This document shows, piece after piece, positions 79 to 32,134 of a stretch of DNA of 64,000 nucleotides (positions within the stretch are counted from its first letter, which is position 1; every line of letters begins with the position of its first letter). The translations under genes were made by a program, and so were the position numbers. This stretch comes from Phallusia mammillata (lineage: Eukaryota), in assembly GCA_965637545.1 (NCBI GenBank), contig OZ281496.1, forward strand, positions 6,696,001 through 6,760,000, in the 5' to 3' direction. Below the pieces are notes generated by a model. The model was not told the origin of the DNA. It ran no database searches and was given only the letters and a program-made list of their open reading frames with translations.

Positions 79-3000
79 CACTGCAGACGACTGCAATACC
101 ACCACTCGGTACTTTCTCCAATCCTGCCCGTTCATGTGTTGAACTGAAAGATGCTGGGTTAAAAGATGGAATCTACGTCATAAAACCGTCACTAAAATCG
201 TTTGAGGTAGATACCTTTTATACATTTAAAAAAATGTTTTTCAGATATACTAACTCTTAAAATATCTTATATCTTCTTGGTTTTACACCAGTGATACGCA
301 ACAAACAGTTCAGTAATTGTTTTTTACTTTGCATTAGGTTAATTTTTGTCGTTTATTTTAGCGGTTCAAGGGTAAAAAGTGTTCTGTAAAACACGGTCAT
401 TTGTGTTTGAAAGCAGATTAAGTGTCTACAACCATTTCCATTTTAATTCCCATTTACAAAAAAATGATCTGGAAAGCACTTGTTCGTAGGTTTATTGCGA
501 CATGAAAGCTGCTGGTGGTGGATGGATTCTAGCAGCAACTATTAACGACAATCTCAATATAAGAGAAACTTATGATGATTTGTGGTTTCTTACGACAAAC
601 ACTAACCAAACTTCTTTGGGTAAACTATGTAACATTAATTACACCGAAAATATATACTTATTTTTTTATTTACGATTTAAGGCTACCAAAACTGGATGAA
701 CACAAATACGTTTGGATCACTTGAAACTTGCACAAGTTCAGACTTTAAAAGTCAAGCTTATTATGAATATCAGGCAAATAACGTGTGACGTAAAAATATG
801 CTTTAAATACAACAAGGAAAACTTTCTAGGGCAAAGACATTATGTTGCGCCATGTTCCAAACCAAACACCACTGAATTTTAGCAGAGAGCAGAGTTTTCT
901 GCAATACCAAACTGCAAACGGATTTATGGAAAATTATGGAGGAAATTTGCAAAAAATATACAATCACCATTACCCACTGAAGCCAGCGAATGGTATTGCT
1001 TTTTTGTTTGACGGTTCTAATAAAAAACATTGCTGATGCTACAAGTTGCTGTATTTGGGCATGCATTAAATACCACCACTGCTACTGAAAGAACCGACCT
1101 GTTATAAATTAGCTAAAGTTTAGTTTAAAACCAAAATATATCGTTTTTTCATTGTTTGTAATTTCAGCTTTTTACCCTGATGTGAATTCAATCCTGGATG
1201 GGCTTGCTGCAAAATCAACAGAAATCACAAATTTAATTTCTGATTTCTATTTTTACGACTACGGTTCAAGCGCTAATCGGCTCCATGATAATAATTTGTT
1301 TGGGGAAAATTACGGAATGGAGGTACGTGATCTAAGTTTCACATTGTCGTTCGAATTTAAACGATAATTGATTATTTAGATCTCATTCTACACATTTCAA
1401 TATTGCTATTTCAAGTATGGATCTTGTCAGACCCGCCCGTTAACCTACGGATTGGATTACAAGTAAGTCAAATTTGTCAAGTCTACTTTTCGATGTGAGA
1501 TTTACGTTTTTATTAAGATGCGACCTTGGCAACATTATGCAGTCCAGCAGAAAAATACATCCATTCGTTGCTTTGTTTGCTGTGGGAAATTTTGGTCAGT
1601 GCCCCGGTTCCATAAGAATTTACGTAAGCGCAAATTGCGTGATGACCTTGTTGCATTTTAAATGGGTCCTTGATTTTTCAGGTGGACGGCCGTCGACCGG
1701 TAACGGATTCAAACGTTCTGTACAAAGGCAATCACACTCTCAACAGTTTCTTTTTACATTATGAAGCGGGATGTAAATATGGCGTGACGAATGCCAGCTT
1801 GTGTGATGTTTTGTTTTATACCATCAATGTTAAGGTAAATAGTGTTGGTCTGCTATTACTGCGCATAGATATAATTACTTCACAAATGTTGTTTTGAACT
1901 TCCTGTCTGCTAAAGCAGTGCTGGTAAAATATAAGCGATTGAAATATTAAAAAAATTAAAAAAATGTTGTCCATTTTGGCCATGGCTCTAAGTAGTTTTT
2001 GTGTAAGTTTCTGATGTATGTTGTAGTGATTTATCATCATTTTTTTCCAAATTATTTAACAAAAGTCAGTCCGAAATATTTGGCAAAATGTTTGCCTGTA
2101 GAATAAAAGTAGAAAAAACTTGAATAAAATGAATAATTTATATTTATTTATTTCTGAAAACAAAACTGTGCATTAGAATAAGATTGACAGTAACAATTTT
2201 GTTGACAATATCCTTCTGCTATCACACAGGATTGGAAATCATCCGGAATTCCCGAAATTAGTTTAAGCAACTATCAATACAGTACATACTATGATTTTGA
2301 TTGGAGAATTTACAGCGCTGTATCCAACACGCTTTTTGGTTACACATTGATTTCGAGGTAAACTGTTGTTCAATGGTCTGTTGTTTAAACAAAACTTTTG
2401 GAAAATTGTTGATTAATTTTAATATTCAGAAAAGGTGGCGTTTTAATTCCTGAAGCAGAGATCAACAATGTTACTTACAAAATATTGGAAATAATTTCAG
2501 AAACAGACAACTTTTGTAAGTAAAAAATTATCAGTTTACACGTCAATCATTTATGCATGCTTAACTATTGAAAAGGTGAAAAACATTATTCGTTATGTAT
2601 ACTATTTTTTAAGCATTGTCGTCATCGGTGCACAGAGATTGTCGAAACGTCTGAACGATGTATTCTATATACACCAGTACCTTGGCAGTAATGTTTATGC
2701 TTAAATTACTTTTCAAGTCCGTGTATAGTGTTCCTAAGTAGACTATTTTTTTTCTTAATTGTGCTTAAGCTTTCCTATTACTTTAATCACTTTTGTTTTT
2801 GCTTAAGGCCCGGATTGCTTTTATGATGATGACGTACTTTCAGTACCAGTTCAATTTTCCATCGGAAACGATTCAGTGGTTAACTCGATGCTGCCACCAA
2901 GTGTAAAACCTCTACCGACCGGTTTTGTTCAGTTTCGTGCTTATGGAAGAACTGGGAGCATCTACGCAATGTGTCCTGCTGTAAAGTAAGACTGCTATGT

Positions 3001-3446
3001 ACAAAACAGTGGTTGTAGAGTACGTGTAGATATCACACCACCCTTTTGACTAAAATTAAATAAATATTCAAACATTGTTCAATTGACACTAAAGGGGGAT
3101 TATTGAATTTATAAATCTGTATAAGGTGGTACAAAAAAAGTTTAGGTAAGACTTATTTAGTGGGATGTACTTTTTAAAAGCTCCAATTTGTTTAGAGTGA
3201 ACGATTGGCGAAGCGAATTTGTTTGTGTTGGAGGAATGAAAAATCCAGATTCTCGATACTTGGACGATTGCAATGATTTTACAAGTAACTTTTCTGTTTC
3301 TTTTAAAGTTTTCTTTGAACTTATCTTTTATTCTCACTGTAGATTGGAATGGATTGCTGTTTACCATCTTGAACGAAACGACTCCAGTTGAATATTCTCA
3401 TTCACAAAGTGATTTAGATTCAACAATTATGATATTTTATCGTTAA
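79..3446 (+). CDS. Intelectin-like gene copy A, multi-exon, 5' exons lie before the window; reading frame intact
   Basis: Hand-spliced exons translate to PLGTFSNPARSCVELKDAGLKDGIYVI..FE|VYCDMKAAGGGWILAATI..|YQNWMNTNTFGSLETCTSSDFKSQAY|GKDIMLRHVPNQTP..LQYQTANGF..YPLK ... TGFVQFRAYGRTGSIYAMCPAVK|VNDWRSEFVCVGG..DDCNDFT|DWNG..DSTIMIFYR*. These match intelectin hallmarks (RSC, CDM-GGGW, NW-N-NTFG, GFVQFR, terminal FYR). All introns are GT-AG except one GC-AG (774), phases are consistent, and no stops were found. Confidence 0.92.
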
Positions 3447-4444: not shown

Positions 4445-4856
4445 GAAGAACAGGAAGCGTTTACGAAATGTGTCCTGCTGTTAAGTAAGTCGCTCCAGGT
4501 TCATAAAACTGTACAAAAAATACAACAGTAAATATAAAAAAATTATTAAAGGTTTTAAAGTTACTGGGCTCTAATTAATGCCTAATTATACATCATCCGA
4601 ATTTAAGGTAAATGATTGGCGAAGGGAATTTGTGTGTGTTGAAGGAATGAAGAATCCAGATAATTCCTACTTGGATGACTGCAATAACTTTACAAGTACA
4701 AACAGTTTGTGTGCTCAAATATTTTTCTTCAAATATATTTTGTGTCAACCAGATTGGAACGGATTACCGAACAATGTAGTAAAGAAACTTACTCCAGTTG
4801 ATTATGCTCATTCTCAGAGAGACTTGGATTCGACAATTATGATATTTTATCGATAA
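4445..4856 (+). pseudogene. Orphan 3' fragment of an intelectin-like gene (end of the GFVQFR exon plus the last two exons)
   Basis: RTGSVYEMCPAVK|VNDWRREFVCVEGMKNPDNSYLDDCNNFT|DWNGLPNNVVKKLTPVDYAHSQRDLDSTIMIFYR*. No upstream exons. The acceptor before VNDW reads TTTAAG-GTA, one base short of the phase used in the paralogs. Confidence 0.85.
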
Positions 4857-7140: not shown

Positions 7141-9320
7141 ACATTGCAAAAACCTAATTGCATAATGTTGTCCAGTTTTAATTGTTTGGTGTTGTAAACG
7201 TTATATTACGCCAAAGACTTCTTTTTAGGTAAGCAAGGAAGTTAATGTTTTAATAACATAACTTTAATTTTAATTCTAAGCTGAAATTAGCACCCAAAAA
7301 GACATTGGTGAGCGTACGGAATAGTTATCATAATGAAAGTTTGTGACCAACCATCTGAACAACATTACAGGCTTCTTCTGTTTTAGCTGATTGTAAATTG
7401 CATGCTTTATTTTGTTGCTGGTTGAGTCTGGCATTTTATTCAGTTTCAGCAAGCAACGTTTTTAGAATACGTTACACTGTGGCGACCTCTCTTGCATGTG
7501 TACAATCGTGTTTATCGAAGCGTGCGTTTTGCCTTTTTCTCGCATTGTCGTTGTTGCCTTATAAGCGCGTTTTTGTTGTTGCGCGTTCTTCTTTATTATC
7601 GAACTGCAATGAAATAAAGCATCCGCTTTAACACAACATTATTTTGAGCAGCAAATTGGCAGCTGAAGCTTACAGCACCAGCTTGTTGTTTGATACGTTA
7701 CTGCTTTCTTTGACGAATCCTGTGTTCTATAAACACAAAACGTAAAGTTTAATTTAAAAAAGAAACAAGGGGGAAGTAATTATTTTTGACCAGGTTTTAA
7801 TTTGTCATGTAGTTATGTGCAATGTCAGTTTGTTTTGTACACACGTATTAGTCTCTGATTGCAACAAAAATGGGACATCGAAACTTGGAATAGGTCTCGC
7901 GAGGCAAAAAAATGTAAGACACATAGGTCTAACACACAAATAAAAATTGACCAATTTATAGTCTGGTCCAGTAAAAGTGACCTGATCAACATTTTATCAC
8001 AATTGAACTTATATCCCCACCTCTTCGCGACTTTCGGCGTGTCATTTAAATCTGACTGTAAAAAAACGTAATTATTTTTTTAGAATCTATTAATCATCTG
8101 ATAGAGTTGGAAATTAAGACAGTTGCAAACAAGTGTCAACAAATTAAGATAATTACAAAAAAGTGCCAACAAATTGCTGTATTTCTATTGAAACTGTTTC
8201 TTTCAGTCTAAGCGGGAAGGCGTTGTATATTAAGTCCAAATTAACAGAATCAACAGGATAAACAATAAAAAAGAAAACTTACCGAATCTACCAGACCTTT
8301 GCCATGCACAATCATCAAATACGAAATTAAGAAAATCAGACAGATTTCTTTCTTCATTGTCGGTTGTCTTTACAAAAGTAAACTCAGCCTCAACTTTGCG
8401 ACCGTCCATCCAGAAATTTTGCTATAATACTTGTGCTTCTGCGTTTTAGCCACAAACCGGATGTTTTTAGTCTGCGATCTAACACTGTCTTTGATGGCGA
8501 AGTTGACATGAACAATTGTCTTCATAAAAATGTAAAATGATTTCTAAGAAATGTTTTGACATGAAAGGGCCAAAAACAAAATGTTTGCACATCTATTGTT
8601 TTTGCAAAAAAAAATCTTGTGTTTTTTTCTGCGTCGCTCTGTGGTGCGACATGTGCTGTATGAGCGTTAACACAGTCGGTTTAGTGTAGTGTTTTATGCG
8701 TTGATAGTATTACATCCATAAGACAACAATATTATCAATATAAATTTAAGTTTTATTTCAAACCCTGTTTGCTTAAACAAAAACGCACACGTTCTGTATT
8801 GGCCGAAACCCTTTGAAGTCGCTTACTGTCTATTATAAATAAACAGCATATATTACGAAAGCAATCGTTCCAACAAACATCGACCACCTTTGTGCAACTT
8901 GTCGAAAAATTACGCAGAGAAATTTGGATTAATGTTTTGAAAACTCGCAACTTGCCAAGTTTACAGATTTTCACTAGCGAACCATCAGTGGTTAAGTATT
9001 CTCAGTATGACATAGTTAATAGAAATCGTTTGGGCGCTGTGATCTGCAGTAAATCAATGTCCTGTTATGTTTCGTAATAACTTCATAAATCTAGTGATCT
9101 AAGTTTTTATTAAAACGTTTTAACGTGCGTTTTATTTTGCACGTCAAAGCAGCAGAGAGCAGCTTTTTGGCAATATCATACAGAAAACGAACTTATGAAA
9201 AAAAAAAAATTAATTTAAACCAGCTGAGACGTTCTGATTTTAGAGTATATCTGAATGATTTTGATCAACTGTTCCATGGTGCTCCTAAATTCCACTAAGA
9301 AATATTGATAATTTCAACAG

Positions 9321-10190
9321 TTATCTCTGCTTCCAAACAACGGAATATGTCGTCGAAGTCCACGGAAATCGCAAATTTAATTTCTGATTTCTATTTTTAA
9401 GATTGTGCTATTGACCCCTCCCGTTTGTATGACAGTGAGTTATTTGACGATGCTTGCGACATATCGGTAGATTTGTTGTATTACACGTGTAGTTGTGAAT
9501 GGAACAGTTCCTACACATGTTTCCTTGGAAACACGGCATGTTTATTATCCAACAGAGTACCAAATCAATTGTCCAAACAACCCAAGTATGTTGTGTGATG
9601 GATTTTGAATAAGTTTTTTCATTTTTATTATACCTTGTTTCTTTACCCATGTTCTCTTTATGTCTTTTTGGTGAGGAAAAGAACAGAGACCTAGGTAACA
9701 CAATTCACAATACTTTATTTTTTGCTCTGTTTGCCTAAAAACTTTGATTACTGCATTAGTTACTTTGATTTTATGATAAGTGAACACTGCGTTATTGCTT
9801 CTTTCAAAGATTTATGGGCCCAAATCTTACGCTAACGACGGAAATAAATGCGCAAGGTCAAAGCATCATGGAGCGTAAAAAGGAGAAGGATACAACTGTT
9901 GGCTCATAAATAAACGAAATATAGCTGTACCGCATTCATGACACATAATACTAGATAGTGTGAATGATTTTATAAAGATACGACAGAAACCAAAGATAAA
10001 GGGGCCATTTTAGTTCTTGCTTTAGAACTGATTGTACTTTGGTCCTGACGCGGATATAATTGCACCAGTGCAAGTCCGGTTTGTATTTTCCATCTGTAAT
10101 TTCTGCGGTAAAATGACATCACGCTCTAGCGAACGTTGACCTACCAAGGATATCTCTGTGCACACAATGGGGTAATTCCCAGTTCGTGCG
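9321..10190 (+). pseudogene. Highly diverged intelectin-like pseudogene fragments
   Basis: Exon 9321-9466 has a phase-1 acceptor and reads ..SSKSTEIANLISDFYF*DCAIDPSRLYDSELFDDACDIS|GT, colinear with AAKSTEITNLISDFYFYDY..GME of copy A; TAA at 9398-9400. 10027-10190 shows TDCT, APVQ..FSICN, LP..G..QF(R)A, resembling the PDC..VPVQFSIGN..LPP..GFVQFRA exon with frameshifts. Confidence 0.65.
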
Positions 10191-11476: not shown

Positions 11477-13239
11477 GGAAGTCGCACATCCGTAAGCCTA
11501 AGTTAGGAGCAGTGATCCCGCTATAATCTTGGATAGGTTTGCGTAAGCTTATATTATTTAGTAAAAGTTAACCACGTCACCTTTTCCAAAAATCACCGAC
11601 CAAATTCGAGATCACCTAACTGATTTCCGTTACAATTTAATTAATTTATAAGTAAACTGAGAGGTGAACAGTCAGTCCGTTATTGCTACTTAGGCAAGTC
11701 TAAATATTATATTTGAATAATTTGTGAGTATACAGAGAGACTTGTAAGTATACCTAAAATAATAATAATTTAGAAACAAATCTAGTGTTCTTTTGAGTGA
11801 TAAAAGAACACCAGGGCCTGTAGTCAGTGCACAATACCACTTTTTTCGTCTGGACATCGTGCAATATTTTTTACCTAAACTATGTTGGTAATAACCATTT
11901 TGGAAAACGTCACCCTTAATTTATTATTTAGAAATACACATCAATAAACAAAACGAGGTTTAAATCAATATTTATCGTTAGTGATAACGGGGCTTTAAAT
12001 ATCGCCATATTTACGTACAAAAAAACAACATGTAAAGCACTTTCTGTTTAGGCTACCATCTGGCAATACATTCGCTTTATTTGGTTTACCAGATAAGACA
12101 AAATGTAATTAAGGGAGAAAGGAAATTAACGGATGTATTATGTTGGCTGAACTGGAGAACGAAATTGTACTGAAATTTTATCAAAAGCAAACAGTATAAA
12201 GCGTGGAAAGGAATGTTAGATGTCATTGATGTACCTCGGCATAACTTGTTTTAATGACTGAAAATATATAGAGATGGATAGGACAATTGGTGAATCATGA
12301 TTGAACGCGTCTATATGTAGCACACTTGATATACAGCACTTTCGGTTTAGGCTGACACATGTCAGTAACCCGGTTTGTAGTAAGAGAAAGGAGAAAATGA
12401 ACTGCTGTGTAGTGTTGACTTTACCAGACAAAAAGGCATCATATTAAAACTAACACTAAAGCGCAGACAGTATGAAACAATAAATAGTGCAACTAAAAAC
12501 ACACTTAAAACCAATCATATAATGTGAACCTTGTTGGTATATTTTTACGTGTTGCAGATATCATATAAACATGAGTCATACTTATGAAATAGAACATTCC
12601 GAAGAGAACAAAACTATCGTGTTCAAAGAAGTACAAATTACACAAAATAACCCCAATACAATAAATGAAGGTAAAAAAGGTTCAGCAAAACAACGACATA
12701 CTCTGAAATACTGTATAGTCTGAAATATTTTTGTTTTTCAAAAACTAGAAAATCAAGAGACCTTCTTCAATGAGTACGCGGGATCGTCAACAAACGCACA
12801 TGAAGATCCTATCGAATCAACAAGACCAGTAGCTGATACCGAGCAAGGTGTCGGTAAGTTGTCCTTTTAAATATCACGTAGTGTATATTAGTCTGATATG
12901 TGCGTGTTTTTACGGGTGTGTATGTGTGTGAGCATCAATTTGATTAATTTCAACTGTTATATCCTGCATTGATTGTCCAAAGTTGTGTGTTTTATAGAAC
13001 CTGACAAAGGGCAACCGCCCTTTTTCTGAATCCTCAATTTCATAGACATGTGGTGTATCGTGTATTACAGAACCAAGGCGCAAATATCGAACGAGTTACT
13101 GTGATTGCATGAACGTTGTATTTCGTCATCGTCACTTTGTCCGTGCTCGACCTCGATTGTCATTTGTCGCCACTTCACACCTTTTACCATCTGTACAGTT
13201 ACGTCATCGCCACCTTTCTCACTATATATATTCACGTGT

Positions 13240-13518
13240 GTTGTAACGATACCAGAGGAGAATCAGCGACAAGCTTTCTCTCACATGAGAGACTACCTAT
13301 CTCTCTCTCTCTCTCTCGCTCTAACAATATCGACGATGCTACTAGCTAACTCAATAAACCAACTTTAACGTCCAACGCCGTCCAATATATCGGACTAAGC
13401 TCAGACAAGCAGTAGCTCAGATAGTCAAGGAATTAAGGGTGCATAACATCTACAGCCAAAGATACTTCTGTAGTGAAAGTACGACGTCATCAGGACAAAT
13501 AACCCCTACAGACACACA
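13240..13518 (+). mobile_element. LTR-like insertion in the transmembrane exon region of copy B
   Basis: Starts TGTTGTAACG, contains (CT)n and AATAAA, ends in ..CA. Absent from the equivalent exon of copy C. Boundaries uncertain and no perfect TSD. Confidence 0.4.
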
Positions 13519-14853
13519 GGTGTGTGATATTTGCTAATATATAAACTCTAAAACAAAATGCTTTGTTTGTTTCTTTTTTGTTTCAGAATCAAAATGAAGA
13601 AACCTATGAATGTAAAATGCTCTGTTTATTTCTTTTTTGTTTCAGAATCAAAATGAAGAAACCTATGAATGTAAGTCCACGACCAAGAAATTTCAACCAA
13701 AGAAGTTTGATTTGTTTTTTGCATTTTACCTTAAAAGGAATTCTGGTCCAAACTTTGCTGTTTTTCTACATTCTTTAGTTAAAATCACTAAAAATTGTTA
13801 CCCTTTAGTAAAATATGTTAACTTGGTAAAGAAACATGTACATGAATAAACGACTTCCAAATATACAATTATGGCAGATAAAATAAAGTGCTTTTGAGAA
13901 CTCATGTCAGCATAAGATGTGAAATTCTTAATCATGATTATTATCTATAATTTCACACCAATACAGGCAACGGGTCAAACTTTTTATAACACAACTAAGT
14001 TTGTACCAACAAGACCACCGCTTGGTACTTTCCCCAATCCCGCCCGTTCGTGTGTTGACCTTAGAGACGCTGGGTTTAAAGATGGAATCTACGTCATACA
14101 ACCGTCGCTCAAATCGTTTGAGGTTTTAAACGGAATTTAAAGTTTGATAAATACAGTTAGATACAGCAAATTAATTTTCATGTCTGAACGTAGATTCCAT
14201 CTTTAAACCCAGCGTCTCTCAGGTCATTTGATAAATACAGCAAATTGATTTTCATGTCTGAACAAGCGTTTCTGTCACAAAACAATGAACAACTATTTGC
14301 GAATTTCTAGAAAGATAAACACCGTCCCCTCTCTTGTGCATAGGTTTACTGTGACATGATAGCTGTTGGTGGTGCATGGATTCTCCCGGCCACTATAAAC
14401 AATATTGTGCCTGAATCTGATTATCAATCATGGTTTCCTACGACAAATGATAATCACCGGAAGAACTTTGGTGAAAAAATTTGAAGTAGCCTAAATATTG
14501 ACAATTTTTTTAACCTACACGTTGTTCAATTGTAGATCACCAAAACTGGATGAACACAAACATATTTGGATCATTTGATAATTGCACGAAATCAGATTTC
14601 AAAAGTCAAGTTTATTTTGAATATCAGGCAAACTATCTAGTTTTAGGTTCTTAAGTTTGTGTTACACACGAGTATTACTTTAGGGAAAGGACATTATGTT
14701 TCGTCATGTCCCAAATCAAACACCACTGGAGGCCAATAGAGAGCAGAGTTTTCTGCAATATCAAACTGAAAACAGTTTTTTGGGATATTATGGAGGAAAT
14801 TTGCATAGAATTTTCAATTTGCATTACCCATTGAAACAAGCTAATGGTTAGAT

Positions 14854-15442
14854 CAGTGGTTCCCAACCGGGGAGGAATTTTATGAGTTCAGGGGAGAAGT
14901 TTCAAAAAAAACTGTAAAAAAAATACATTACAAATGTTTCAAAATATTTTTGTAAATACATTGATGTCCATTAAAATTTGTACGCGGTTCACATTTGAAA
15001 CCGGTTGTAAAGGATTCTGAAAGAGACATCCCTAACTATAAGGTCTACTTGTATATACGGCCGCATGGTACGTTTTAGGCGCTTAAATTAATCGATTATT
15101 GTCGTAACAAAGTCCATTGTTTTAACTTTTTTTGACAGTCTGGCTGTTGCTTAGTTGCTTAAAAACTGAACAGTTTACAGTTAGTAAACAGTGTATGTAA
15201 TGAAACTAGATTGTTAGTTACGTATCATTCTCTTGTGTAGATTTTAGCTGTAGCCACTGTCACAAACTGCGCCGCGTGTACAACTTTCCAGAGCGCAAAC
15301 AAGAGCAAATTTCGCATTGAGTCGTAATGTGAAATAAATTGCTATAATTTTTTTATGTTGTATTTTTTGTCTTATGGGGAGGAATGAATAGTTCGAAAAT
15401 GGGCAAAGGGAGGAATGTAGCAAAAAAGGTTGGGAACCACTG
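14854..15442. mobile_element. hAT-type MITE (589 bp)
   Basis: Perfect 15-bp TIR CAGTGGTTCCCAACC / GGTTGGGAACCACTG. 8-bp TSD GGTTAGAT at 14846-14853 and 15443-15450. Confidence 0.95.
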
Positions 15443-17989
15443 GGTTAGATCAATAAGTGCGGCAGATCAATACCGTATGACTGATTGATGTACCAGCAAG
15501 AATGTCGAAGCTTTAAGTGGAATTGGTACCCAGGAAATAAGCTTAACAAACCCAGCACGTTTTAAACCAAACTTTTTAAATTGATTTTTCACAATCATAC
15601 CAATGTTTAATCTTTTTTTGTACTTGAAGTTTTTTATCCTGATGTAAGTTCAATGTTGGATCGACTTGCTGCAAAATCAACAGAAATTACAGACTTAATT
15701 TCTGATTTCTATTTTTACGATTATGGTAATAGTTCATATTTGCTCTATGACGAAGGACTGTTTGGAACCGAACACGGAATGAGGGTAGGTCATATAGGTT
15801 TTCTTATCCTTGTCCTAAAAAAGTGTTTGTGGAGATTTTATCCAGCGCCGGTCAAAGATGCAAAATAGGCAACTGTCCAAATGACTATGTTGAATATGGG
15901 TTGGATGATGGGTAGGTCAAACCGTACATCAATTTTCGTTTTTACTTTAGTTTTGTTTTTCACATTGAAACTAAAGATGTGGAAATGGGAACTTGATGCA
16001 ATCAAGGAGAAAGATTCATCCCTTCATTGTTTTTTTTTGCTGTGATAAATACGGAACACTGTTTGGACGACCTCCGATTCGTTGTACGAGAATATGGCGG
16101 TAAAATGTTTCAAAATTAAACTTTGATTATTCACTGTTACAGCTGTACGGTCGACTACCAAACACCGATTCAACAGTTAAATATACCGGAGGCCACACTC
16201 ACAACAACTTCTTTTTATATTATGAAGCGGGTTGCAGATATGGTTTGCCTTATGCCAGCTTGTGTGATGTTTGGTTTTATGTCATCAATAAAAAGGTCTG
16301 TTGCATTTGTTGTCAAATATATTTTTAGTCCAAATTTTGATTTTATGTTTTGAGGATTGGAAATCATCGGACTCTCCAAATGCATTTTTTAGAAAGTCTT
16401 CATCTAGCATATATTATACTTTTGAATGGGAAATTTACTAACCGGTATCCAACACACTCTTTGGTTACACAATGGTTACAAGGTAAATTACTATTTCTGC
16501 AGATAAGGAAAAAAAAATAAAGTACGAAATAAAAGTATCGAAATTGAACAAACACAAATTTTTGGAGTTTTGATTATCCAAACAGAGATAAACGCAGTCA
16601 CCAACAAAATGCTGGAAATTATTTCCGAATATGACAACTTGTGTATGTAAAACTTATGTTCGGTTATTTACCTATAATTATATGGCATGCGGCTCCTCCA
16701 GTCTTTGGTTGTTTCAGGTCCGGATTGCACTTATGATGACGACGTACTTTCAGTACCAGTTCAATTTTCCATCGGAAACGATTCAGTGGTTAACTCGATG
16801 CTGCCACCAAGTGTAAATCCTCTACCGACCGGTTTTGTTCAGTTGCGTGCTTATGGAAGAACTGGGAGCGTCTACGCAATGTGTCCTGCCGTTCAGTAAG
16901 TAAGACCGGTGTATATATAATGATTTACACTAAGATAGAGCAAGAGTACAGAAAACCTCGTTCGCGCTGTAATGTCTTTGTAACAGCTATTGTTAATTGT
17001 TTTTGGTAGGGTAAACGATTGGCGAAGCGAATACGTGTGTATTGGAGGAATGAAAAACCCAGACTCTCGATATTATGATGACTGCAGTGATTTTACAAGT
17101 AATTATACAAGTTATTTTTTTGGACATATTTACGTACTAGTTTGTAAAACATTTTTGTATTAAACAGACTGGGACGGATTGCCGAAAACCTTGTTGCACG
17201 AAACAACTCCAGTTGATTATGCTCATTTTCAGAGAGATTTGGATTCAACAATTATGATATTTTATCGATAAATTTTGTCAAATTGAAGTAACACATTTGT
17301 TCAAAATACTACTTTTAAGGATTTTATTGAAATAACTGTATACTTTGGTTATAAATAATAATTCCTGCTTATATGTTGGATAATCTCCTAGAGTTCATTG
17401 TTAACTCATATCTTTGTTTGTAGATATATTGTAAAAATAATTACAAGATTACCTAATCAATTAATTTGTTGATATATGTCCGATAATCTTTTTGAAATCA
17501 TTTTGACTCTTGTAGCGGCCACGTGCTTCATTTGTAGATGCATTGTAATTACAAATACAAGACAATAAAATCCATGTAACCACAAAAATATGTATTTTAT
17601 TTGAGATACCTAGAATGAAACGTTTTAGGGTCAAATTCAGCAAGTTGGATTAAACCTATATTAATGATGGGATAATTCCTGAAAGTGGTATTTACCAATC
17701 GAGATGAAATTTTAATCTGGGATTAAATAGGCAAAATTTTAATCCTGTCCTCCCAGGTTTTAGGATGGATTAAGTCGAATTCTGGGGTGTTTTGGGTATT
17801 TATCCTTAGAAAAAGTCGGTTTTGTGTTTAATCAAGCTATATTTGCAGTTGTTAACCACAAATCATAAAATAGTATTTAATAAAAAAATCGAATTAAACA
17901 AGGATATTATTGGCCGGTGCTTAAGGATGCAGTAGTCGCCTTGTGTCACCCCCCAGAAATCACGTCGTACGCCCATGGTTCCCAGCAGA

Positions 17990-23374: not shown

Positions 23375-23767
23375 TTTACCTGTCGACATTTCTGTTATCT
23401 GCTGGACGTAAATGAGCTAAAACTTTTATTTAAATCGCCAACAATGGTGATAAGTTTGACACCAATAATTTAAAGTTGTCAAAATTAGAAAAGATTGCTT
23501 ATTTGCTCGAAAAAGGTGATTTATTGTACAATGTAGCTATAAACACGACAAATGATAGCATATCCTATGTCATGATACTTTTATGTCACATAGTAAACAA
23601 AATACGAGGATATATTTCGCTTTATGTTCCATTGCATTTTTAAACTGGATTAAATGTTATTAAAATGCAAATTAACTTACACCCGACTACCATTTTTGTA
23701 AACAATTCTCTGCAATCAGTGGCAATACAAGAAAAATCAGTAACATTAGGCAAAGTGCTTTCTTCAT
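23375..23767 (-). pseudogene. Disabled paralog of the candidate secreted peptide
   Basis: MKKALCLMLLIFLVLPLIAENCLQKW*SG with a GTAAGT donor (TAG at 23689-23687). Last exon AHLRPADNRNVDR* with the original acceptor deleted. Confidence 0.45.
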
Positions 23768-25492: not shown

Positions 25493-25916
25493 ACACAATG
25501 CATTCCACTCTACCAACTAAACACGTTTGTGAATGCGCGGTTAAACTAAAATTCAAGTCAACACATAAATTATTACATTATTCAATAAACAAGAGAACTG
25601 AGAGTGGAACTCTGAAACAACATCCAGCTTGCGTTTGTATGACTAATAGGCGGATACTGCTTCGCATTTCACAAGAGACGTAACATCCTTAATATAATTC
25701 CTTCGAGTGCTTGTCAAAACACAATGCATCCCACTCAACCAACCAAACACGTTTGTGCATACGCGAATAAACAAAGATTCGAGTCAACACATTAATAGCT
25801 ATTATTACACGATTGAATAAACAACAGAACTGAGAGTGGAACTCTGAAACAACATGTTGTGTTGGTTTGACTAACAGGCGGGGGCTGCTTCGCTTTTCAC
25901 AACAGACGCAACATCT
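25493..25916 (+). repeat. About 225-bp tandem duplication upstream of copy C
   Basis: Units start at 25493 and about 25719 and share AGAACTGAGAGTGGAACTCTGAAACAACAT exactly. Confidence 0.85.
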
Positions 25917-26168
25917 GTAGTGTTAAATCCTCCATTTAACTCGTTCACTGTTTGTCAATTATTCACTAATGTTGGAATGCTTATGATAATAAGAACATGT
26001 TCTTTGTTCGTCTGTGGTCATTAGGCGGGTTTGCTTTGGTTCATGATTTACTTGACAAGGTTTATTATAAAAACAACTCAGGCAACTTATATAACATAAT
26101 CAAATATTTATGTCTGGAAAGGAGTAAAAAATTGTAAATGTGTTCTTAGATTTTCACTGAATTCAATC

Positions 26169-29100
26169 ATGAATTATGGTGGTGTTAATATTGATGCTAA
26201 TGCCTATGAAACTATTCAGATGAACGAAGGACAAAATCATCATGTTCCAGGTAATAAAGTAACGCCAGGTAAATGTCTATAAAGTTAATGTATAAAATTA
26301 GTTTGATTGTATTTTTTGCAAACCTACAACAAATAGTTAAAACTGAACAAGATAAATTGGTAATAGTCCATTCAACAAAACTTAAATCTACGTGATACCT
26401 TTATTTGATGATCACTTCTAACACTTAACTGCAAAATGTTTTGGTCTCTGGCTAATCATGTATCTTGTATTAATCAAGCAGAATTCTGGGAAACATCCTC
26501 AAATGTGTATGAAAAACCTATATCAAAGTTTCATAGAGAAAATGGCGATACATCAAGTACCCCAGGTGCATTTGTGCAAGAATATGGTAAGGTTTTTCTG
26601 AAAAAGTTTATCGAAATCCTAATATCGTTAAACATTTTTACTTGAACTCAGAAAATGTTAAAATACAATCCAAAAGAAGTGAAAAAAAGTGTGTGCAAAA
26701 ACCAAGCTTCTCTAAACTAAGTATTATGTTGGTGTGTGTGATTGTAATCCTTGCTGCTTTGGCGATAGTTTTCGGAATGTTTTATTTCATGAAAGACCAG
26801 GTGTGTAGTGTTTGTTTAGTCAAAAAGAATATGCAATTTTTTATGCAACAACATTTTTTGCTTCAGAACGAAAGGGAAAAAGTTAATGAAAGTAAGTCAT
26901 ATATTCGAAGAGATCCTTTTCAAGATTTTTAACTTTCTTGGGGTTAATAAATTGGTTCAAAAGTAGTAACATTACCGAATTTGAGAAACAAGATCTGAAA
27001 ATTAAGGACATTTTATGAAAAGTAGTAAAAATTCACAAAGCTGTCCAAGGGATCGTAATGTTAGTTTCACAAATTTGCTCAGAAACTCACGGTATAGTTT
27101 TTTCATGGATATTTAATTCCTCATTGTTTTCTTATACGTTTGCAAATATCATTTGCATAGCACCAAGGACAACTGGACGAACAAGTTTAAACACAACTGA
27201 GTATGTGACAACAAAACCCACTTTTGGTAAAGTTATATAGTTGTTGTTTGTATATTCAGTTTAATTTGTGTTGACAAATTATTTTTTCAGCATCACAGAC
27301 CACTGGTCAAACAGCTTTGAACAGAACTAAATATGTGACAACAAAGAAACCATTTGGTAAAGATGTATAGTTGCTTCAAAATGCGGTTCAATTTTAGTGT
27401 TGACAAATTATTATTTTAGCACCGCTGACAACTGGACAAATAAAGTTTAACACAACTGAATCACTACCAGCCGCAAAATCACCGCTTGGTACTTTCCCTA
27501 ACCCTGCCCGTTCATGTGTAGAACTGAGAGATTCTGGATTCAAAGATGGAATCTACGTCATTAAAACGTCACTAAAATCGTTTGAGGTATTTTTCAAATC
27601 ATTGAGGTATTTTTCAAATCAAGTCTTTATTTTTTTATCATTGTTTAAACATGTTTCTCAAACCTTACGTTTTAAACTTATGAGATATGCAACAAATGTT
27701 TTGTAAACTACTTGCTAAAAGGCTTTCTTTAAGAGAAACCAGTTATTATTTTTTTTAGTATTTGGAATGCAGATAATCAATGCAGAAGTGTGTGAAAAAA
27801 ATGAAAAATAAAAACAAATGTGGAAAATGATAGAAATACAGAAATTTATCTTGAATTTTCGAAAATGATTTAGTTTTTTCTTGCATTTAGGTTTACTGTG
27901 ACATGATAGCTGCTGGTGGTGGATGGATTCTCGCGGCAACCATTAACAATAATAATTTTAATACGACTGGGGCTAATGGTGGATCATGGTTTCTTATGAC
28001 GTCAAACAATCACCAAAATTACTTGAGTAAATTTAACAATGTGACACAAATTGCAACAGCGTTTCAAAATTTTAATAATTCCAGATTATCAAAACTCGAT
28101 GAACACAAATACATTCGGAACATTTGACAATTGTACAAGATCAGATTTCAAAAGTCAAGCTTATTCTGAATATCAGGTAAATATTATGTGCTGTAAAAAT
28201 GTGGTATATTTTTTACAACGGGAAATTTCCAGGGAAAAGACATTATGTTACGTCACGTTCTAAACCAAACACCACTGGGAGCCAGCAGAGAGCAAGTTTT
28301 TTTGCAATATCAAACGGAGAACGGTTTTATGAAAGATTATGGAGGAAATTTGCACAATTTGTTTAATAATCATTATCCATTGAAACCAACAAGTGGTAAT
28401 ATACTTAAGCTTGCCATAATTTGTTCTTGACAGTGGTTGTCATATTGTTTTTTATTTTTCTGTAAACAAAGCATATTACGCATACAAAGTAAAGAATCAT
28501 TTTTGGTAACAAACAACAATAAATACAAATTAGTCATATCGAGTATTCGTAAGCGAGTATGTTAACAATTGTCTTTGGAAAGATAGTTTATTTGATTGCA
28601 CTTCTGAAACACCTTATTTATTTCTTACACTTTACTTTTGTTCTATTTTCAGTTTTTTACCCCAAAATAAATTTGATGTTGGATCGATTTGTAGCACAAT
28701 CTTCAGAAATCCGAAACCGCATCTCTGATTTCTATTATTATGATTATAGTATTCATTCAAGCGGGCTATTCGATAGTAATGTTTATTCGTCTCACGGAAT
28801 GCAGGTAAGTTATCTGCATGACCGTCTTTTTGTGGAATTACAAACAACAAGTTTTTACACAGGTGTCATCTAGCACAACTCAGTCTTGCTATCCAAGCTC
28901 GTATAAAGCAAATTGTCAATTAGGGAGTTTTCGATATGGGTTGGATTATACGTAAGTCAAATATTGCTTTTGGTTTTCCGGTTTGCTGGTTTCACGTCAA
29001 CACTTACTTTTTCGAAACTAAAAAGATGCGACCTTGGCAATATGTTTCGATCAAGCCGCAAAACGCACCCCTTCATTGCTTTGTTTGCTGTGGGAAACTT

Positions 29101-30582
29101 TGATCATTGCTTTTCCAACATAAACCTTTGGGTAAAGAAATACTGCATTAACAATTTGTCTCAATAAATCCCATTGTATGTTTGATATGTTCAGGTTTTA
29201 TCTTTTCGACCGAATACAGATTCAATACATTTGTACAAAGGAAATCAAACTCTCAACAATTTCTTTTTACATTATGAAGCACAATGTAGATATGGGTCGT
29301 CACATGCCAGCTTGTGTGATGTTTGGTTTTACGTCATTAACACCGGAGTAAGCAGCGTTCTTGTATGTGTTTGATCTTGTTTTCGCAAATGCCATAACCA
29401 AACCATTTTTATACCATTTCGGTAATATATGAACATTTTATGCAACTCCATCAGATTCGTTTAAGTAGTATTAAATTACTTTCAAATTCTAATCATCTCT
29501 TTTTTGCTCTTTGTCACGTAGAATTGGAATTCATCTGCAGCGCCAACTACAGAACCGTACAAAATAACACATTCATCACACTATTATTTTGGATGGAGAA
29601 TTCGTGAAGCTGTATCTAACACACTTTTTGGTTACACAATGGTTTCAAGGTAAACCGTTTTAGCTGAATGTTGTGTGTAAAACTGACTTAGACATCGTAA
29701 TATTTTCTATTGCATATGACTTTATTGACATGTTTAGGAAAAATGGAATTTTGATACCTAAAACAGAGTTCAACGCTTTTATTTACAAAACACTTGAAAT
29801 TATTTCAGAGACAGACAACTTTTGTGAGTATCAGAAGTTTGAAATAGCTAATACCCTTTGTTTAAATTTAAAGTTAATTGCCATGCAAATATAAGTTTAT
29901 TGATTTTTTTTAATTCCCTTTTTTCAATTTACCAGTGAGTTTCCAAATTATTTTTTAAATCTTACTTGCATGTACATTAAATAGCTAAAGCTTTTCGATA
30001 CTTTTTCTCACTTCAGGTCCGAATTGTTTCTATGATGATGACGTACTTTCAGTACCAGTTCATTTTTCCACTGGAAACGATTCAGTGGTTAACTCGATGC
30101 TGCCACCAAGTGTTAAACCTCTACCGACCGGTTTTGTTCAGTTTCGTGCTTATGGAAGAACTGGTAGCGCCTACGCAATGTGCCCTGCTGTGAAGTAAGT
30201 CGCTTTTTTGGTAAACTGTTTAAAACATACATTTACAGTAATCGATTTAAAGATTTGTAGTTTCATGATGTGCCTAAACTAAACAAATTGAATTATTTAT
30301 CTATTTTCTGAATTTTTTAGAGTGAACGATTGGAGAAGCGAATTTGTGTGTATCGGAGGAATGAAGAATCCAGATACTTCCTATTTGGATGACTGCAATG
30401 ATTTTACAAGTAAATTACCATTTAGTGCCCTTGTCCATTAAACATTTTTTAACTTGTAAACTTTTCAATTAAACCCAGATTGGAACGGAATGCCGAATAC
30501 TGTAGTCCAAGAAGTTACTCCAGTTGATTATTCTCATTCTCAGAGAGATTTGGATTCGACAATTATGATATTTTATCGATAA
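26169..30582 (+). CDS. Intelectin-like gene copy C, complete: type II transmembrane intelectin with Thr-rich stalk and inserted module
   Basis: ATG 26169 MNYGGVNIDANAYETIQ..; exon 26479-26586; TM exon 26652-26800 (SIMLVCVIVILAALAIVFGMFYFM); 25-nt exon 26867-26891; stalk exons at 27161, 27291 and 27420; then all intelectin and insert exons to ..STIMIFYR* (TAA 30580-30582). Every intron is GT-AG, phases are consistent, and no stops were found. Confidence 0.9.
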
Positions 30583-32134
30583 ACACGATGAGTTGACAAA
30601 CTGTAAATTGTTTAAGTCGCTTTTTTGGTTGGTTCACTGTACATATATGATGAACTGATTTATTTTTTCTGATGTGTTTCCAATCCTTAAAATTAAAATG
30701 TTTCAACCCGTATTTACTTACCTATACTTGAATCTGTGTTACAGTAATTAAATTATTTCACGAACTTTTTTTCTCGTGATATAATGTTGTTACCATGAGA
30801 ATTTATCGTTAAGTTTGTCACAGTTTATCACGTCCCGTTACAGTTCATAGTAAATACTTACATCTGCAGTGTATTTTCTACATCCTCAAATTTAATTGTA
30901 TAATACTATCTTTCTTGTGATTGTAGACCTGTTATTTGCATAAATTAATGTTTATTATTTAAATTGCCTGAACCAAACTATATGAAGTGGTTTGTAGACC
31001 ATTAATTTTTTTTTCAAACCAGCATCATGTGTGGGCAGATGATAAACATTTCGAACAGCCAGGCTAGGTACATAAAACGTCCTACTTCGTATTTGCCTGC
31101 GTTTTGGATCCTTTTCCTCTTATTGCCTCATACAAAATATTTAAAAAATTGATTGCATATTAATTAAACGCAAAAAAGTATTTATCGGAATGGTCACGTG
31201 TTTGATCAATACAAAATAGCAGCTTCAGTATACCACGTGCAATTGGTTGCTTGTTGAATGCTCATGCAAAAACGATGCCATACTTAACATTGAAAACAGT
31301 AGTTATGGCGTCACAAATGTGACGATATATTTTTTCCATTAGTTCCTGTGTGTTAACAAGATTTATGTTGAACGGTTTTTAACTTCGTATTGGCATGCAG
31401 GTCAAAGAGTGTATTTATGCTTGTTATATATTCAACCGTATTACGGCCGTGTTTATTGTTTCCCACCAGAGTGATTGATTATAATCATTATATAATATAT
31501 TGATACATTATATTGATTATATAATAATTATTTGCTTGCTCGTAAAAGACGCCACCCACCCTTTTCCACTCGACCAGCCAAACACGTATGAGAAGCGGTT
31601 AAATTAAGACTCTAGTCAGCACACGCATAGTACATTCTTGCATAAACAACATTTGCGACCGAACGCGTATAAATTAAAACTTCGGTGTACATGTTAAACC
31701 GGCTAAAATTTATTCTCCACTGTATGACAAAACAATAATTTAGAATGCATATAGTGTAATTAGCTGTCTGTTACGTTTTGTTCTTGGTATTGCAAGCAAA
31801 TGGTCAGGAAGTTTCAAACAGCCACTTGTTTGTCAGTACCGTTTTGGGTCACATTAGATCAAAACCAGTAGCTCGCAGTAAGTAAACGAGTTTCTGGGTG
31901 TATTAAAATAAAACCAACTACACTTGGAACCAACTAGCAACTCCTGCAAAACACGTTGTCCAAAATGTTGTATTAATTAATAGACGGGTATTGTTTCTTT
32001 GCTTCCCACAGTAGACGTTACTACCTTTAAATAAAATGCCCACTGTTTGTTGGAGAATGCATGCGTTAAAATAAAACTCTAGTGTTCAAATTATACACAT
32101 ACTTTTGTTTTTTTAATTTCTGGAATAAACACCG

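What the first reader, a model, noticed from the sequence alone, without database searches (positions are those of the whole stretch)
26169..30582. Type II transmembrane intelectin family: a candidate lectin-receptor system
Seen: copy C joins, in frame and with canonical splice sites, an N-terminal tail with no signal peptide, a hydrophobic segment of about 24 aa, a Thr-rich stalk and a complete intelectin domain. Copy B has colinear tail exons. Known: characterised intelectins (human ITLN1, Xenopus XEEL, ascidian and amphioxus forms) are secreted with a signal peptide, whereas type II topology is known for FIBCD1, a different fibrinogen-type domain. Inference: this cluster encodes cell-surface glycan receptors built on the intelectin fold, expanding by birth and death like an immune-receptor locus.
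Basis: partly seen in the sequence, partly recalled or inferred. Interest (0 to 1): 0.85.

Follow-up and report, generated by a model that had tools for sequence, protein, structure and literature searches.

The report
Membrane-anchored split intelectin gene
A sea-squirt gene, copied into RNA, encodes an intelectin-type sugar-binding domain that appears anchored in the cell membrane by its front end instead of being secreted, a layout found unnamed in several sea-squirt annotations and in no paper I could find.

Summary
Copy C (26169-30582, + strand) splices with GT..AG at every intron. It gives an 85-aa tail with no signal peptide, one 23-aa hydrophobic helix, three 22-aa Thr-rich repeat exons and an intelectin domain.

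Spliced RNA contigs join part of exon 2, the helix exon, the stalk exons and the first intelectin exons in one 591-nt piece with no mismatch. Exon 1 has no RNA cover.

The mRNA also includes six more exons (238 codons) inside the intelectin domain. The real product is therefore about 712 aa, not 474.

The genome is most likely Phallusia mammillata. The same layout occurs in about a dozen Styela clava RefSeq models, one Ciona model and an intronless transcript contig from another run. All are unnamed or called intelectin-like. A Clavelina relative instead has a signal peptide and collagen.

Copy B keeps tail exons but has no helix exon and carries a stop codon. Two further fragments support birth and death of copies.

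Surface location, glycan binding and signalling remain inferred. I found no paper on membrane intelectins.

The scan has already noted this family on other DNA of the same genome (s1-392394, s1-410945, s1-388442, s1-395744, s1-368973).

Verdict: a real, new variant of a known kind, of moderate to high interest.

The parts
26169..26250 (+). Exon 1. Start codon and the first 27 aa of the cytoplasmic tail, including Y13 in YETI. An alternative donor lies at 26268.
   Evidence: First in-frame ATG after the stop at 26097. Phase-1 donor. The Tyr-Glu motif sits at the same distance from the start as in Styela tails. No RNA contig covers it.
26479..26586 (+). Exon 2, tail (Y38 YEKP; first residues of Y63 YENV).
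   Evidence: In frame, phase 1 to 1. Positions 26506-26586 are covered by X6 contig 9, shown by bin depths of 5.89 and 10.1 that match a depth of 15.1.
26652..26800 (+). Exon 3: basic juxtamembrane stretch and the single transmembrane helix (residues 86-108).
   Evidence: Hydropathy 3.25. Flank charge +5 on the N side against -1 on the C side. RNA joint 26800>26867 in X6 and X8.
26867..26891 (+). Exon 4, 25-nt extracellular juxtamembrane exon.
   Evidence: RNA joint. A 25-nt counterpart lies in copy B at 13646-13670.
27161..27356 (+). Exons 5 (27161-27226) and 6 (27291-27356): two 66-nt phase 1-1 Thr-rich stalk repeat exons, each with an N-glycosylation sequon.
   Evidence: RNA joints 27226>27291 and 27356>27420 in X6, X8 and X25.
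27420..27586 (+). Exon 7: third stalk repeat and the start of the fibrinogen-like part of the intelectin domain.
   Evidence: RNA joint 27586>27891 in X6, X8 and X26.
27891..28395 (+). Exons 8 (27891-28026), 9 (28085-28176) and 10 (28233-28395): N-terminal half of the intelectin domain with the YCDM...GGGW motif.
   Evidence: RNA joints 28026>28085 and 28395>28653. Aligns with Styela and vertebrate intelectins.
28653..29823 (+). Six module exons: M1 28653-28804, M2 28863-28951, M3 29026-29131, M4 29195-29347, M5 29522-29649, M6 29738-29823. Together 714 nt, 238 codons, flanked by phase-1 introns and inserted inside the intelectin domain.
   Evidence: RNA joints E10>M1, M2>M3, M3>M4 and M4>M5. 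M6 of copy C has no contig cover, but it is needed for the frame and a paralogue's contig carries 100 letters there. Homologous exons are present in copies A and B and in Styela, Clavelina and Ciona.
30017..30582 (+). Exons 11 (30017-30194), 12 (30321-30409) and 13 (30479-30582, with the stop): C-terminal half of the intelectin domain with the ligand-site region.
   Evidence: RNA joints 30194>30321 and 30409>30479. Best PDB sequence matches are XEEL and ITLN1.
102..3443 (+). Copy A: exons homologous to E7-E13 and M1-M6, all open. Its 5' part lies outside the window.
   Evidence: tblastn.
4447..4853 (+). Partial duplicate: end of E11, then E12 and E13.
   Evidence: tblastn, 82-83% identity.
9165..9572 (+). 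Decayed remnant of E10, M1 and M2 with an in-frame stop.
   Evidence: tblastn.
12571..17268 (+). Copy B. It has exons like E1, E2 and E4, one stalk repeat, and the intelectin and module exons. It has no transmembrane exon, a stop inside M5 (16355-16480), and GGAW in place of GGGW. Probably decaying, although a transcript model exists.
   Evidence: P0002 (Phallusia mammillata CAB3257380.1) matches its exons at 94-100%.

Best explanation
Copy C is an expressed gene of an ascidian, most likely Phallusia mammillata. It encodes a single-pass type II membrane protein of about 712 aa.

Shown:
- The exon structure and the RNA joints from exon 2 onward.
- A single strongly hydrophobic helix 85 residues from the start, with no signal peptide.
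- Three repeat exons forming a Thr-rich, sequon-bearing stalk.
- An intelectin domain whose two halves flank a 238-aa inserted module.
- The same architecture in Styela and a short-tail form of it in Ciona.

Inferred:
- The helix acts as an uncleaved signal anchor, leaving the tail in the cytosol and the glycosylated stalk holding the lectin head outside the cell.
- The head, with its inserted beta-rich module, binds a carbohydrate or other surface ligand, probably with a calcium site altered relative to human ITLN1.
- The tail tyrosines (YETI, YEKP, YENV) couple binding to uptake or to phosphotyrosine signalling. FIBCD1 and type II C-type lectin receptors work in this way.

The cluster turns over by duplication and decay.
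For: Gene model:
- 19 exons, all GT..AG, in frame, 712 aa.

RNA:
- Spliced contigs in X6, X8, X25 and X26 show 13 joints. One 591-nt contig without mismatch links E2-E3(TM)-E4-E5-E6-E7-E8.

Start codon:
- There is an in-frame stop at 26097.
- The Tyr-Glu motif sits 12-14 residues from the start, as in Styela tails.

Topology:
- One hydropathy peak of 3.25, next best 1.16.
- Flank charge +5 on the N side against -1 on the C side.
- No N-glycosylation sequon in the tail and 10 in the ectodomain.
- All but two of the 16 cysteines lie after the helix.

Family:
- 12 of the 17 Styela clava and related models scored (P0009-P0025) have a 33-158-aa tail followed by a 19-22-aa helix.
- Ciona P0044 has a short tail plus a helix.
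- Logan contig L001 (2140 nt, no introns) carries a complete 681-aa ORF of this layout, with stops upstream of its ATG.

Fold:
- The model of the Styela ectodomain (pLDDT 81.6) matches human ITLN1, XEEL and lamprey LSVL at a target TM-score of 0.81-0.83 across the insertion.

Sequence and tree:
- Phallusia paralogue P0003 hits XEEL and ITLN1 at E 9e-7 to 4e-6.
- Copy C groups with the module-bearing ascidian forms, SH-aLRT 94.
Against: - E1 and its junction to E2 have no RNA cover, so the 5' end rests on sequence logic and on a short conserved motif.
- No topology predictor or experiment was available. The cell surface, as opposed to Golgi, ER or a shed form, is not shown.
- The ligand site is only partly kept: R in place of N260, F in place of H263, and no clear equivalent of E274. 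Glycan binding of the ITLN1 type may therefore be lost or changed.
- The tail motifs are short and degenerate, and the similarity of copy C's tail to Styela tails is a handful of residues.
- The runs are only guessed to be RNA by the index. That they are rests on their spliced joints.
- The structure was modelled for a Styela homologue, not for copy C itself.
Confidence: 0.6

Rival explanations
1. A membrane-tethered precursor of a soluble lectin. The helix only targets the protein to the secretory pathway, and the ectodomain is then released by cleavage in the stalk, so the working form is secreted like other intelectins.
For: Many type II lectins are shed (general knowledge). The Clavelina relative P0027 of the same module-bearing clade is secreted, with a signal peptide and collagen repeats. 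The stalk is long and probably exposed.
Against: No furin-type site lies in residues 109-200. The long tails, with a conserved N-terminal tyrosine motif in Styela and Phallusia, suggest selection on the cytosolic part. A helix 85 residues from the start is not a cleavable signal peptide.
Confidence: 0.2
2. A resident type II protein of the Golgi or ER, with the tail-anchor-stem-globular-head layout of glycosyltransferases. It would act inside the secretory pathway rather than as a surface receptor.
For: The layout of short tail, signal anchor and Ser/Thr-rich stem is the classic Golgi type II layout (general knowledge). Ciona P0044 has only about 23 aa before the helix.
Against: Copy C and most Styela members have tails of 33-158 aa and helices of 19-23 residues. 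The head is a lectin fold with no enzyme similarity. The family expands and decays in tandem, as recognition genes do.
Confidence: 0.1
3. A surface recognition molecule whose ligand is not a microbial glycan. With an altered calcium site and a variable inserted module, it might bind proteins or self glycans, as in gamete, allo- or cell-cell recognition.
For: N260 and H263 equivalents are replaced. The module exons, M2 above all, are the least conserved between copies: 38-43% identity, against 93% for E11. Copy C sits on a long branch.
Against: W288, Y297, E262 and D282 equivalents are kept in copy C. Every characterised relative binds carbohydrate (PMC12800186, PMC8185196).
Confidence: 0.15
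4. An artefact: the tail and helix exons belong to another transcript or are chance open frames, and the real gene starts at the stalk or lectin exons.
For: E1 has no RNA cover.
Against: One contig without mismatch joins E2, the helix exon, the stalk and the lectin exons. The architecture recurs in three other species' models and in an independent transcript contig.
Confidence: 0.03

Closest known systems
Secreted intelectins / X-type lectins (human ITLN1, Xenopus XEEL, lamprey LSVL; PDB 4WMQ, 4WMO, 7E1E)
   Same: The same fold and family. The fibrinogen-like start carries YCDM...GGGW and the intelectin-specific C-terminal half ends in ...FYR. A close homologue's model matches at TM-score 0.81-0.83 and sequence E-values reach about 1e-6. 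Equivalents of W288 and Y297, the aromatic box, and of E262 and D282 are present in copy C.
   Different: There is no signal peptide. Instead it has an 85-aa tail, a membrane helix and a Thr-rich stalk. A 238-aa module is inserted in the loop that corresponds to about residues 196-199 of ITLN1. N260 and H263 equivalents are replaced by R and F. The cysteines that make ITLN1 a disulfide-linked trimer were not examined.
FIBCD1 (tetrameric type II transmembrane endocytic receptor with a fibrinogen-related domain; PMC9994688, PMC10825690)
   Same: Type II single-pass layout with a C-terminal fibrinogen-superfamily recognition head. This is the nearest working analogue for a surface pattern receptor built on this superfamily.
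   Different: The head here is of intelectin type, not a classic fibrinogen C domain: Foldseek gives E 1e-19 to ITLN1 against 1e-4 to FIBCD1 over about 140 columns. The stalk is Thr-rich repeats rather than a coiled coil. The nested module has no counterpart in FIBCD1.
Type II C-type lectin receptors with tyrosine-motif tails (Dectin-1, CLEC-2, Mincle class; PMC8185196 for Mincle topology)
   Same: The same logic: N-terminal cytosolic tail with tyrosines, signal anchor, stalk and C-terminal lectin head. They also lie in tandem gene clusters that turn over.
   Different: The lectin fold is unrelated. The tail motifs here (YETI, YEKP, YENV; Styela Y-E-x-A-[IM]-R-Y-E-N) do not match the hemITAM consensus of an acidic triad plus YxxL (from memory). 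Signalling is untested.
Unnamed RefSeq/UniProt models of ascidians (Styela clava XP_039258423.2 and about a dozen paralogues; Ciona intestinalis LOC100177669; Clavelina lepadiformis LOC143452591)
   Same: True family members: tail, helix, stalk and intelectin with the same inserted module. They form one clade with copy C.
   Different: Tail lengths range from 23 to 158 aa. Some Styela members carry two tandem modules (850-908 aa). The Clavelina member is secreted, with a collagen region. None is named or, to my knowledge, studied.

Membership tests
Intelectin (X-type lectin) family | N-terminal fibrinogen-related subdomain with the YCDM...GGGWTLV motif | tested here: met
   Copy C reads VYCDMIAAGGGWILAAT in exon 8. 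PF00147 is recorded on the Styela homologues.
Intelectin (X-type lectin) family | Intelectin-specific C-terminal region and overall fold like ITLN1 and XEEL | tested here: met
   Exon 11 alone has XEEL and ITLN1 as its only PDB hits, though weakly (E 0.5). Paralogue P0003 reaches E 9e-7. The Styela homologue model gives a target TM-score of 0.81-0.83 and E 1e-19. The fold was tested on a homologue, not on copy C itself.
Intelectin (X-type lectin) family | Ligand-site residues of ITLN1 (E274, W288, Y297 per PMC12800186; N260, E262, H263, D282 from memory of Wesener 2015) | tested here: inconclusive
   By the HMMER alignment, carried over to copy C, W288, Y297, E262 and D282 are kept. N260 becomes R and H263 becomes F. 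E274 aligns to S/T, or to D if the alignment is shifted by one residue.
Intelectin (X-type lectin) family | Cleavable N-terminal signal peptide; secreted soluble protein | tested here: not met
   The first 40 aa are hydrophilic (maximum 9-aa hydropathy 0.11). The only hydrophobic segment is at residues 86-108. This is the feature that makes it a variant.
Intelectin (X-type lectin) family | Calcium-dependent binding of exocyclic vicinal diols of microbial glycans | not testable with these tools
   Needs recombinant protein and a glycan array.
Type II membrane lectin receptors (FIBCD1 / C-type lectin receptor class; analogy, not homology) | Single-pass topology with the N-terminus inside and the C-terminus outside | tested here: met
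   In silico only: one helix, positive-inside charge bias (+5 against -1), sequons 0 inside and 10 outside, and the disulfide-rich head after the helix.
Type II membrane lectin receptors (FIBCD1 / C-type lectin receptor class; analogy, not homology) | Cytosolic sorting or signalling motif (YxxPhi, hemITAM, ITAM/ITIM) | tested here: inconclusive
   YETI fits YxxPhi and YENV fits YxN. Styela tails share Y-E-x-x-[IMV]-R-Y-E-N. There is no acidic triad plus YxxL and no ITAM spacing.
Type II membrane lectin receptors (FIBCD1 / C-type lectin receptor class; analogy, not homology) | Presence at the cell surface and ligand-driven uptake or signalling | not testable with these tools
   Needs localisation and functional assays.
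Ficolin-like collagenous lectins | Signal peptide plus collagen G-X-Y region ahead of the recognition domain | tested here: not met
   Absent in copy C. Present in the Clavelina clade member P0027.

The most novel reading that the evidence does not exclude
Ascidians evolved their own family of signalling pattern-recognition receptors on the intelectin fold. These would be type II surface proteins whose tyrosine-motif tails recruit SH2 adaptors, convergent with vertebrate Dectin-1 and CLEC-2. Their specificity would be diversified by tandem birth and death and by a fast-evolving nested module that reshapes or supplements the sugar site.
Probability: 0.2. Interest if true: 0.8.

Novelty: new variant of a known kind. 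Interest (0 to 1): 0.58.

Why it matters
Every intelectin studied so far, from lamprey to human, is a soluble secreted lectin. A conserved, expressed, membrane-anchored form with a cytosolic tyrosine-bearing tail would show that the closest invertebrate relatives of vertebrates also used this fold as a cell-bound receptor. That would parallel FIBCD1 and the type II C-type lectin receptors.

It gives a concrete, clonable candidate for how ascidian cells, which lack adaptive immunity and filter sea water constantly, sense microbial or other surfaces. It also warns that genome surveys counting 'intelectins' by domain alone merge at least three architectures: secreted, collagen-linked and membrane-anchored.

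Two things temper its weight. The models already exist unnamed in public annotation, and function is untested.

Tried and rejected
I worked with single-exon references and with database homologues instead.
- PDB search with exon 7 gave only a chance collagen hit.
- The whole-library HMMER search with exon 11 gave just 8 hits. Two of them (P0001, P0007) are repetitive proteins unrelated to the family.
- The first word-seeded search found only Styela proteins. A profile that included Phallusia fragments and window exons added Clavelina and Ciona, but no full-length Phallusia model.
- The first mixed alignment, A1, misplaced the short tail exons and was not used for searching.
- Copy B: BLAST of the copy C tail exons gave nothing significant. 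Its tail exons were found by eye and by phase. An exhaustive scan for a helix exon was negative.
- An alternative signal-peptide first exon in intron 4 (26892-27160) was considered. One open frame runs into exon 5, but the RNA depth there is near zero, so I dropped it.
- Translation from the Met at residue 89, inside the helix exon, was considered. I rejected it because the frame stays open through exons 1-3 and the tail motif is conserved.
- Papers: five searches found no membrane-bound intelectin. Yan et al. 2013 (22 tunicate intelectins, cited in PMC6321704) and Wesener et al. 2015 are not held. I could not check whether the former mentions membrane forms.
- The hemITAM reading of the tail was rejected as a membership claim because the consensus is not met.
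Full report
**Gene model.** The window is AT-rich (32-36% G+C around the finding) and has short introns, as expected of an ascidian. Reading 26169-30582 on the + strand, I placed 13 exons whose boundaries are all GT..AG. They join in frame into 474 codons. From the start these give:
- an 85-aa hydrophilic tail;
- one hydrophobic stretch at residues 86-108;
- a 25-nt exon;
- three 22-aa Thr-rich units, the first two on 66-nt exons of phase 1-1 and the third opening exon 7;
- an intelectin-like domain that begins with the YCDM...GGGW motif and ends in ...FYR.

**RNA evidence.** Two look-ups for runs found several that hold only the exonic fraction of the stretch. I laid four of them (X6, X8, X25, X26; contigs, not raw reads) on 25400-31300. 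This gave GT..AG joints at:
- 26800>26867;
- 27226>27291;
- 27356>27420;
- 27586>27891;
- 28026>28085;
- 30194>30321;
- 30409>30479.

These are exactly my exon borders, so the runs carry cDNA. Contig 9 of X6 is 591 nt long and has no mismatch. Its piece 26651-26797 sits at record positions 82-228, and its piece 27419-27584 at positions 388-553. The 160 letters between equal the last 3 nt of E3 plus E4 (25), E5 (66) and E6 (66). The 81 letters before fit 26506-26586 of exon 2, and this reproduces the bin depths (5.89 and 10.1 for a contig depth of 15.1). The exon with the hydrophobic helix is therefore joined, in one molecule, to a tail exon upstream and to the stalk and lectin exons downstream. 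X8 repeats this.

Exon 1 has no contig cover, so the 5' end remains unproven by RNA. Its donor could be at 26250 or at 26268. Both leave phase 1.

**The inserted module.** Exon 10 is not spliced to exon 11. It joins 28653, followed by joints 28951>29026, 29131>29195 and 29347>29522. With a sixth exon at 29738-29823 this adds 714 nt, or 238 codons, between phase-1 introns. The full model has 19 exons and 712 aa, still open. M6 of copy C has no contig over it, but it is required for the frame, and a paralogue's contig in X25 carries 100 letters at that place.

The same six exons are conserved in copies A and B. The 'complete intelectin domain' is therefore a split domain. Other first-reader notes on this window (s1-408625, s1-408766) describe the insert, and I confirm that it is transcribed.

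**Organism and relatives.** A whole-library HMMER search with exon 11 returned only eight proteins. Look-up showed that two are Phallusia mammillata transcript models. One of these, P0002 (CAB3257380.1, 'intelectin-like protein'), matches copy B's exons at 94-100%. The window is therefore Phallusia mammillata or something very close to it.

Another hit led to Styela clava XP_039258423.2 (707 aa). It has a 158-aa tail, then a 20-aa helix, then the intelectin domain with the same module. Searching from it, and from a profile that included window exons, gave:
- about 17 Styela paralogues, called 'uncharacterized protein', 'intelectin-1-like' or 'intelectin-2-like';
- a Ciona intestinalis model (LOC100177669) with a short tail and a helix;
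- a Clavelina lepadiformis model with a signal peptide and collagen repeats ahead of the same split domain.

Twelve of the 17 Styela clava and related models scored (P0009-P0025) have a 19-22-aa segment of hydropathy 2.4-3.6 lying 33-158 residues from the start, with more Lys/Arg on its N side. The five without one look truncated at the N-terminus.

P0019 comes from a 2140-nt Logan contig (SRR3402057). The contig has no introns, and two in-frame stops lie upstream of its ATG. It is independent transcript-level evidence for the whole layout in another species.

A quick tree of the lectin core, without the module, places copy C with the Clavelina and Styela module-bearing forms. They are separated from classical secreted intelectins of Ciona, Phallusia, amphioxus and vertebrates with SH-aLRT 94. 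Copy C sits on a long branch.

**Start codon and tail.** The ATG at 26169 is the first in frame after a stop at 26097. An AG 21 nt upstream could serve as a spliced-leader acceptor, which I did not test. Copy C has Tyr-Glu at residues 13-14 (N-A-Y-E-T-I). Styela tails have N-A-Y-E-C-A-M-R-Y-K-N, D-T-Y-E-T-A-I-R-Y-E-N and N-P-Y-E-H-A-M-R-Y-E-N at the same distance from their start. The match is short, but it supports exon 1 as coding. Copy C's tail also holds YEKP (Y38) and YENV (Y63).

**Topology, in silico only.**
- Residues 86-108 are the only window above hydropathy 1.2 (3.25 against 1.16).
- The 15 residues before the helix carry a net charge of +5. The 15 after carry -1.
- The tail has no NxS/T sequon. 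The part after the helix has ten, four of them in the stalk.
- All but two of the 16 cysteines lie after the helix.
- There is no furin-type site in the stalk.

These points favour the N-terminus inside and the C-terminus outside. No dedicated predictor was available.

**Fold and ligand site.** I could not submit copy C's spliced product. I therefore modelled the ectodomain of the Styela homologue P0017 with a 35-row family alignment (mean pLDDT 81.6). Foldseek matched human ITLN1, XEEL and lamprey LSVL over the whole of the targets (target TM-score 0.81-0.83, E about 1e-19), with the alignment spanning the insert. Ficolins and FIBCD1 matched only the fibrinogen-like part, at E about 1e-4. The insert is predicted as helices around a beta-rich body, with weak hits to the N-terminal domains of GH65 enzymes. 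I did not pursue this, as other reports of the scan deal with the module.

I mapped copy C's residues onto ITLN1 through the HMMER alignment of the Phallusia paralogue P0003 to ITLN1. I checked its numbering against E274, W288 and Y297 as given in PMC12800186. By this mapping copy C:
- keeps the equivalents of W288, Y297, E262 and D282;
- has R for N260 and F for H263;
- has no clear E274.

The roles of N260, E262, H263 and D282 are from my memory of Wesener 2015, which is not held. Glycan binding is thus plausible but may differ from that of ITLN1.

**The cluster**.
- Copy A (102-3443) is open in every exon that the window holds.
- Copy B has exons like E1 (12571-12670, 100 nt, phase 1), E2 (12749-12853) and E4 (13646-13670, 25 nt), and one stalk repeat.
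- Copy B has no phase-compatible exon with a hydrophobic segment between them (best 0.42, against 3.25 for the copy C control).
- Copy B also has a stop inside M5 and GGAW in place of GGGW.
- The odd ORF of P0002, which starts out of frame in module exons, fits a decaying but transcribed copy B.
- Fragments lie at 4447-4853 and at 9165-9572, the latter with a stop.

However, 'copy B has colinear tail exons' must be qualified: it lacks the membrane exon.

**Literature.** Five full-text searches combined intelectin with transmembrane, type II, membrane-bound, ascidian, Ciona, tunicate or amphioxus. None found a paper describing a membrane-anchored intelectin. Reviews describe intelectins as soluble (PMC8185196, PMC12800186). 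PMC6321704 cites Yan et al. 2013 for 22 tunicate intelectins, and I could not read that paper. FIBCD1 is documented as a tetrameric type II endocytic receptor with a fibrinogen-related head (PMC9994688, PMC10825690). It is the nearest working analogue.

**Earlier notes of the scan.** The same family has been reported at several other places of this genome: s1-392394, s1-410945, s1-388442, s1-395744, s1-368973 and s1-368984. Those follow-ups reached similar readings. I treat them as leads only. My conclusions rest on the calls cited above.

**Verdict.** The architecture is a conserved ascidian family trait. It is deposited in public annotation without a name and, as far as I could search, undescribed. 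Its role as a surface glycan receptor with a signalling or endocytic tail is a reasonable but untested inference. I rate it a new variant of a known kind, with interest about 0.58.

Noticed in passing
window 43935-49711 (+): Two long overlapping ORFs (1272 and 664 aa) in a stretch of 46-48% G+C. They carry DUF1759, aspartyl protease, reverse transcriptase, Pao peptidase A17, integrase and DUF5641. This is a nearly intact BEL/Pao-type LTR retrotransposon with one frame change near 47717-47753.
   Followed up: partly
window 51080-51907 (+): A 275-aa ORF made of about eight C2H2 zinc fingers, just downstream of the retrotransposon.
   Followed up: no
window 59093-60547 (-) and 36357-37046 (+): A 484-aa ORF with a weak reverse-transcriptase match and a 229-aa ORF with a weak GIY-YIG match. 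They may be remnants of other retroelements.
   Followed up: no
window 25400-25989: Unspliced contigs of the RNA runs X6 and X8 cover this stretch just upstream of copy C at low depth, and stop about 180 nt before the start codon. It is unclear whether this is a neighbour's UTR, a non-coding transcript or part of copy C's 5' end.
   Followed up: no
window 26147-26148: An AG preceded by a pyrimidine run lies 21 nt upstream of the ATG of copy C. It is a possible spliced-leader trans-splice acceptor, as is common in ascidians.
   Followed up: no
window 28863-28951 (M2) and its counterparts at 1380-1460 and 15871-15906: The second module exon is by far the least conserved exon between copies: 43% identity to copy A and barely detectable in copy B, against 88-93% for exon 11.
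   Followed up: partly
P0010, P0011, P0012, P0026 (Styela clava): Some Styela family members carry two tandem copies of the inserted module inside the intelectin domain (812-908 aa).
   Followed up: no
P0027 (Clavelina lepadiformis LOC143452591): The same split intelectin domain sits behind a signal peptide and a collagen G-X-Y region. This is a ficolin-like secreted architecture within the module-bearing clade.
   Followed up: partly
P0002 against window 16222-17268: The deposited Phallusia 'intelectin-like protein' ORF starts out of frame within module exons of copy B and skips M6. This fits the in-frame stop seen in copy B's M5.
   Followed up: partly
window 21722-21814 and 23620-23649: Two weak, stop-containing similarities to exon 11 lie about 1.9 kb apart, each followed by a weak M3-like stretch. 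They may be very old remnants or chance matches (E 0.2-2).
   Followed up: no
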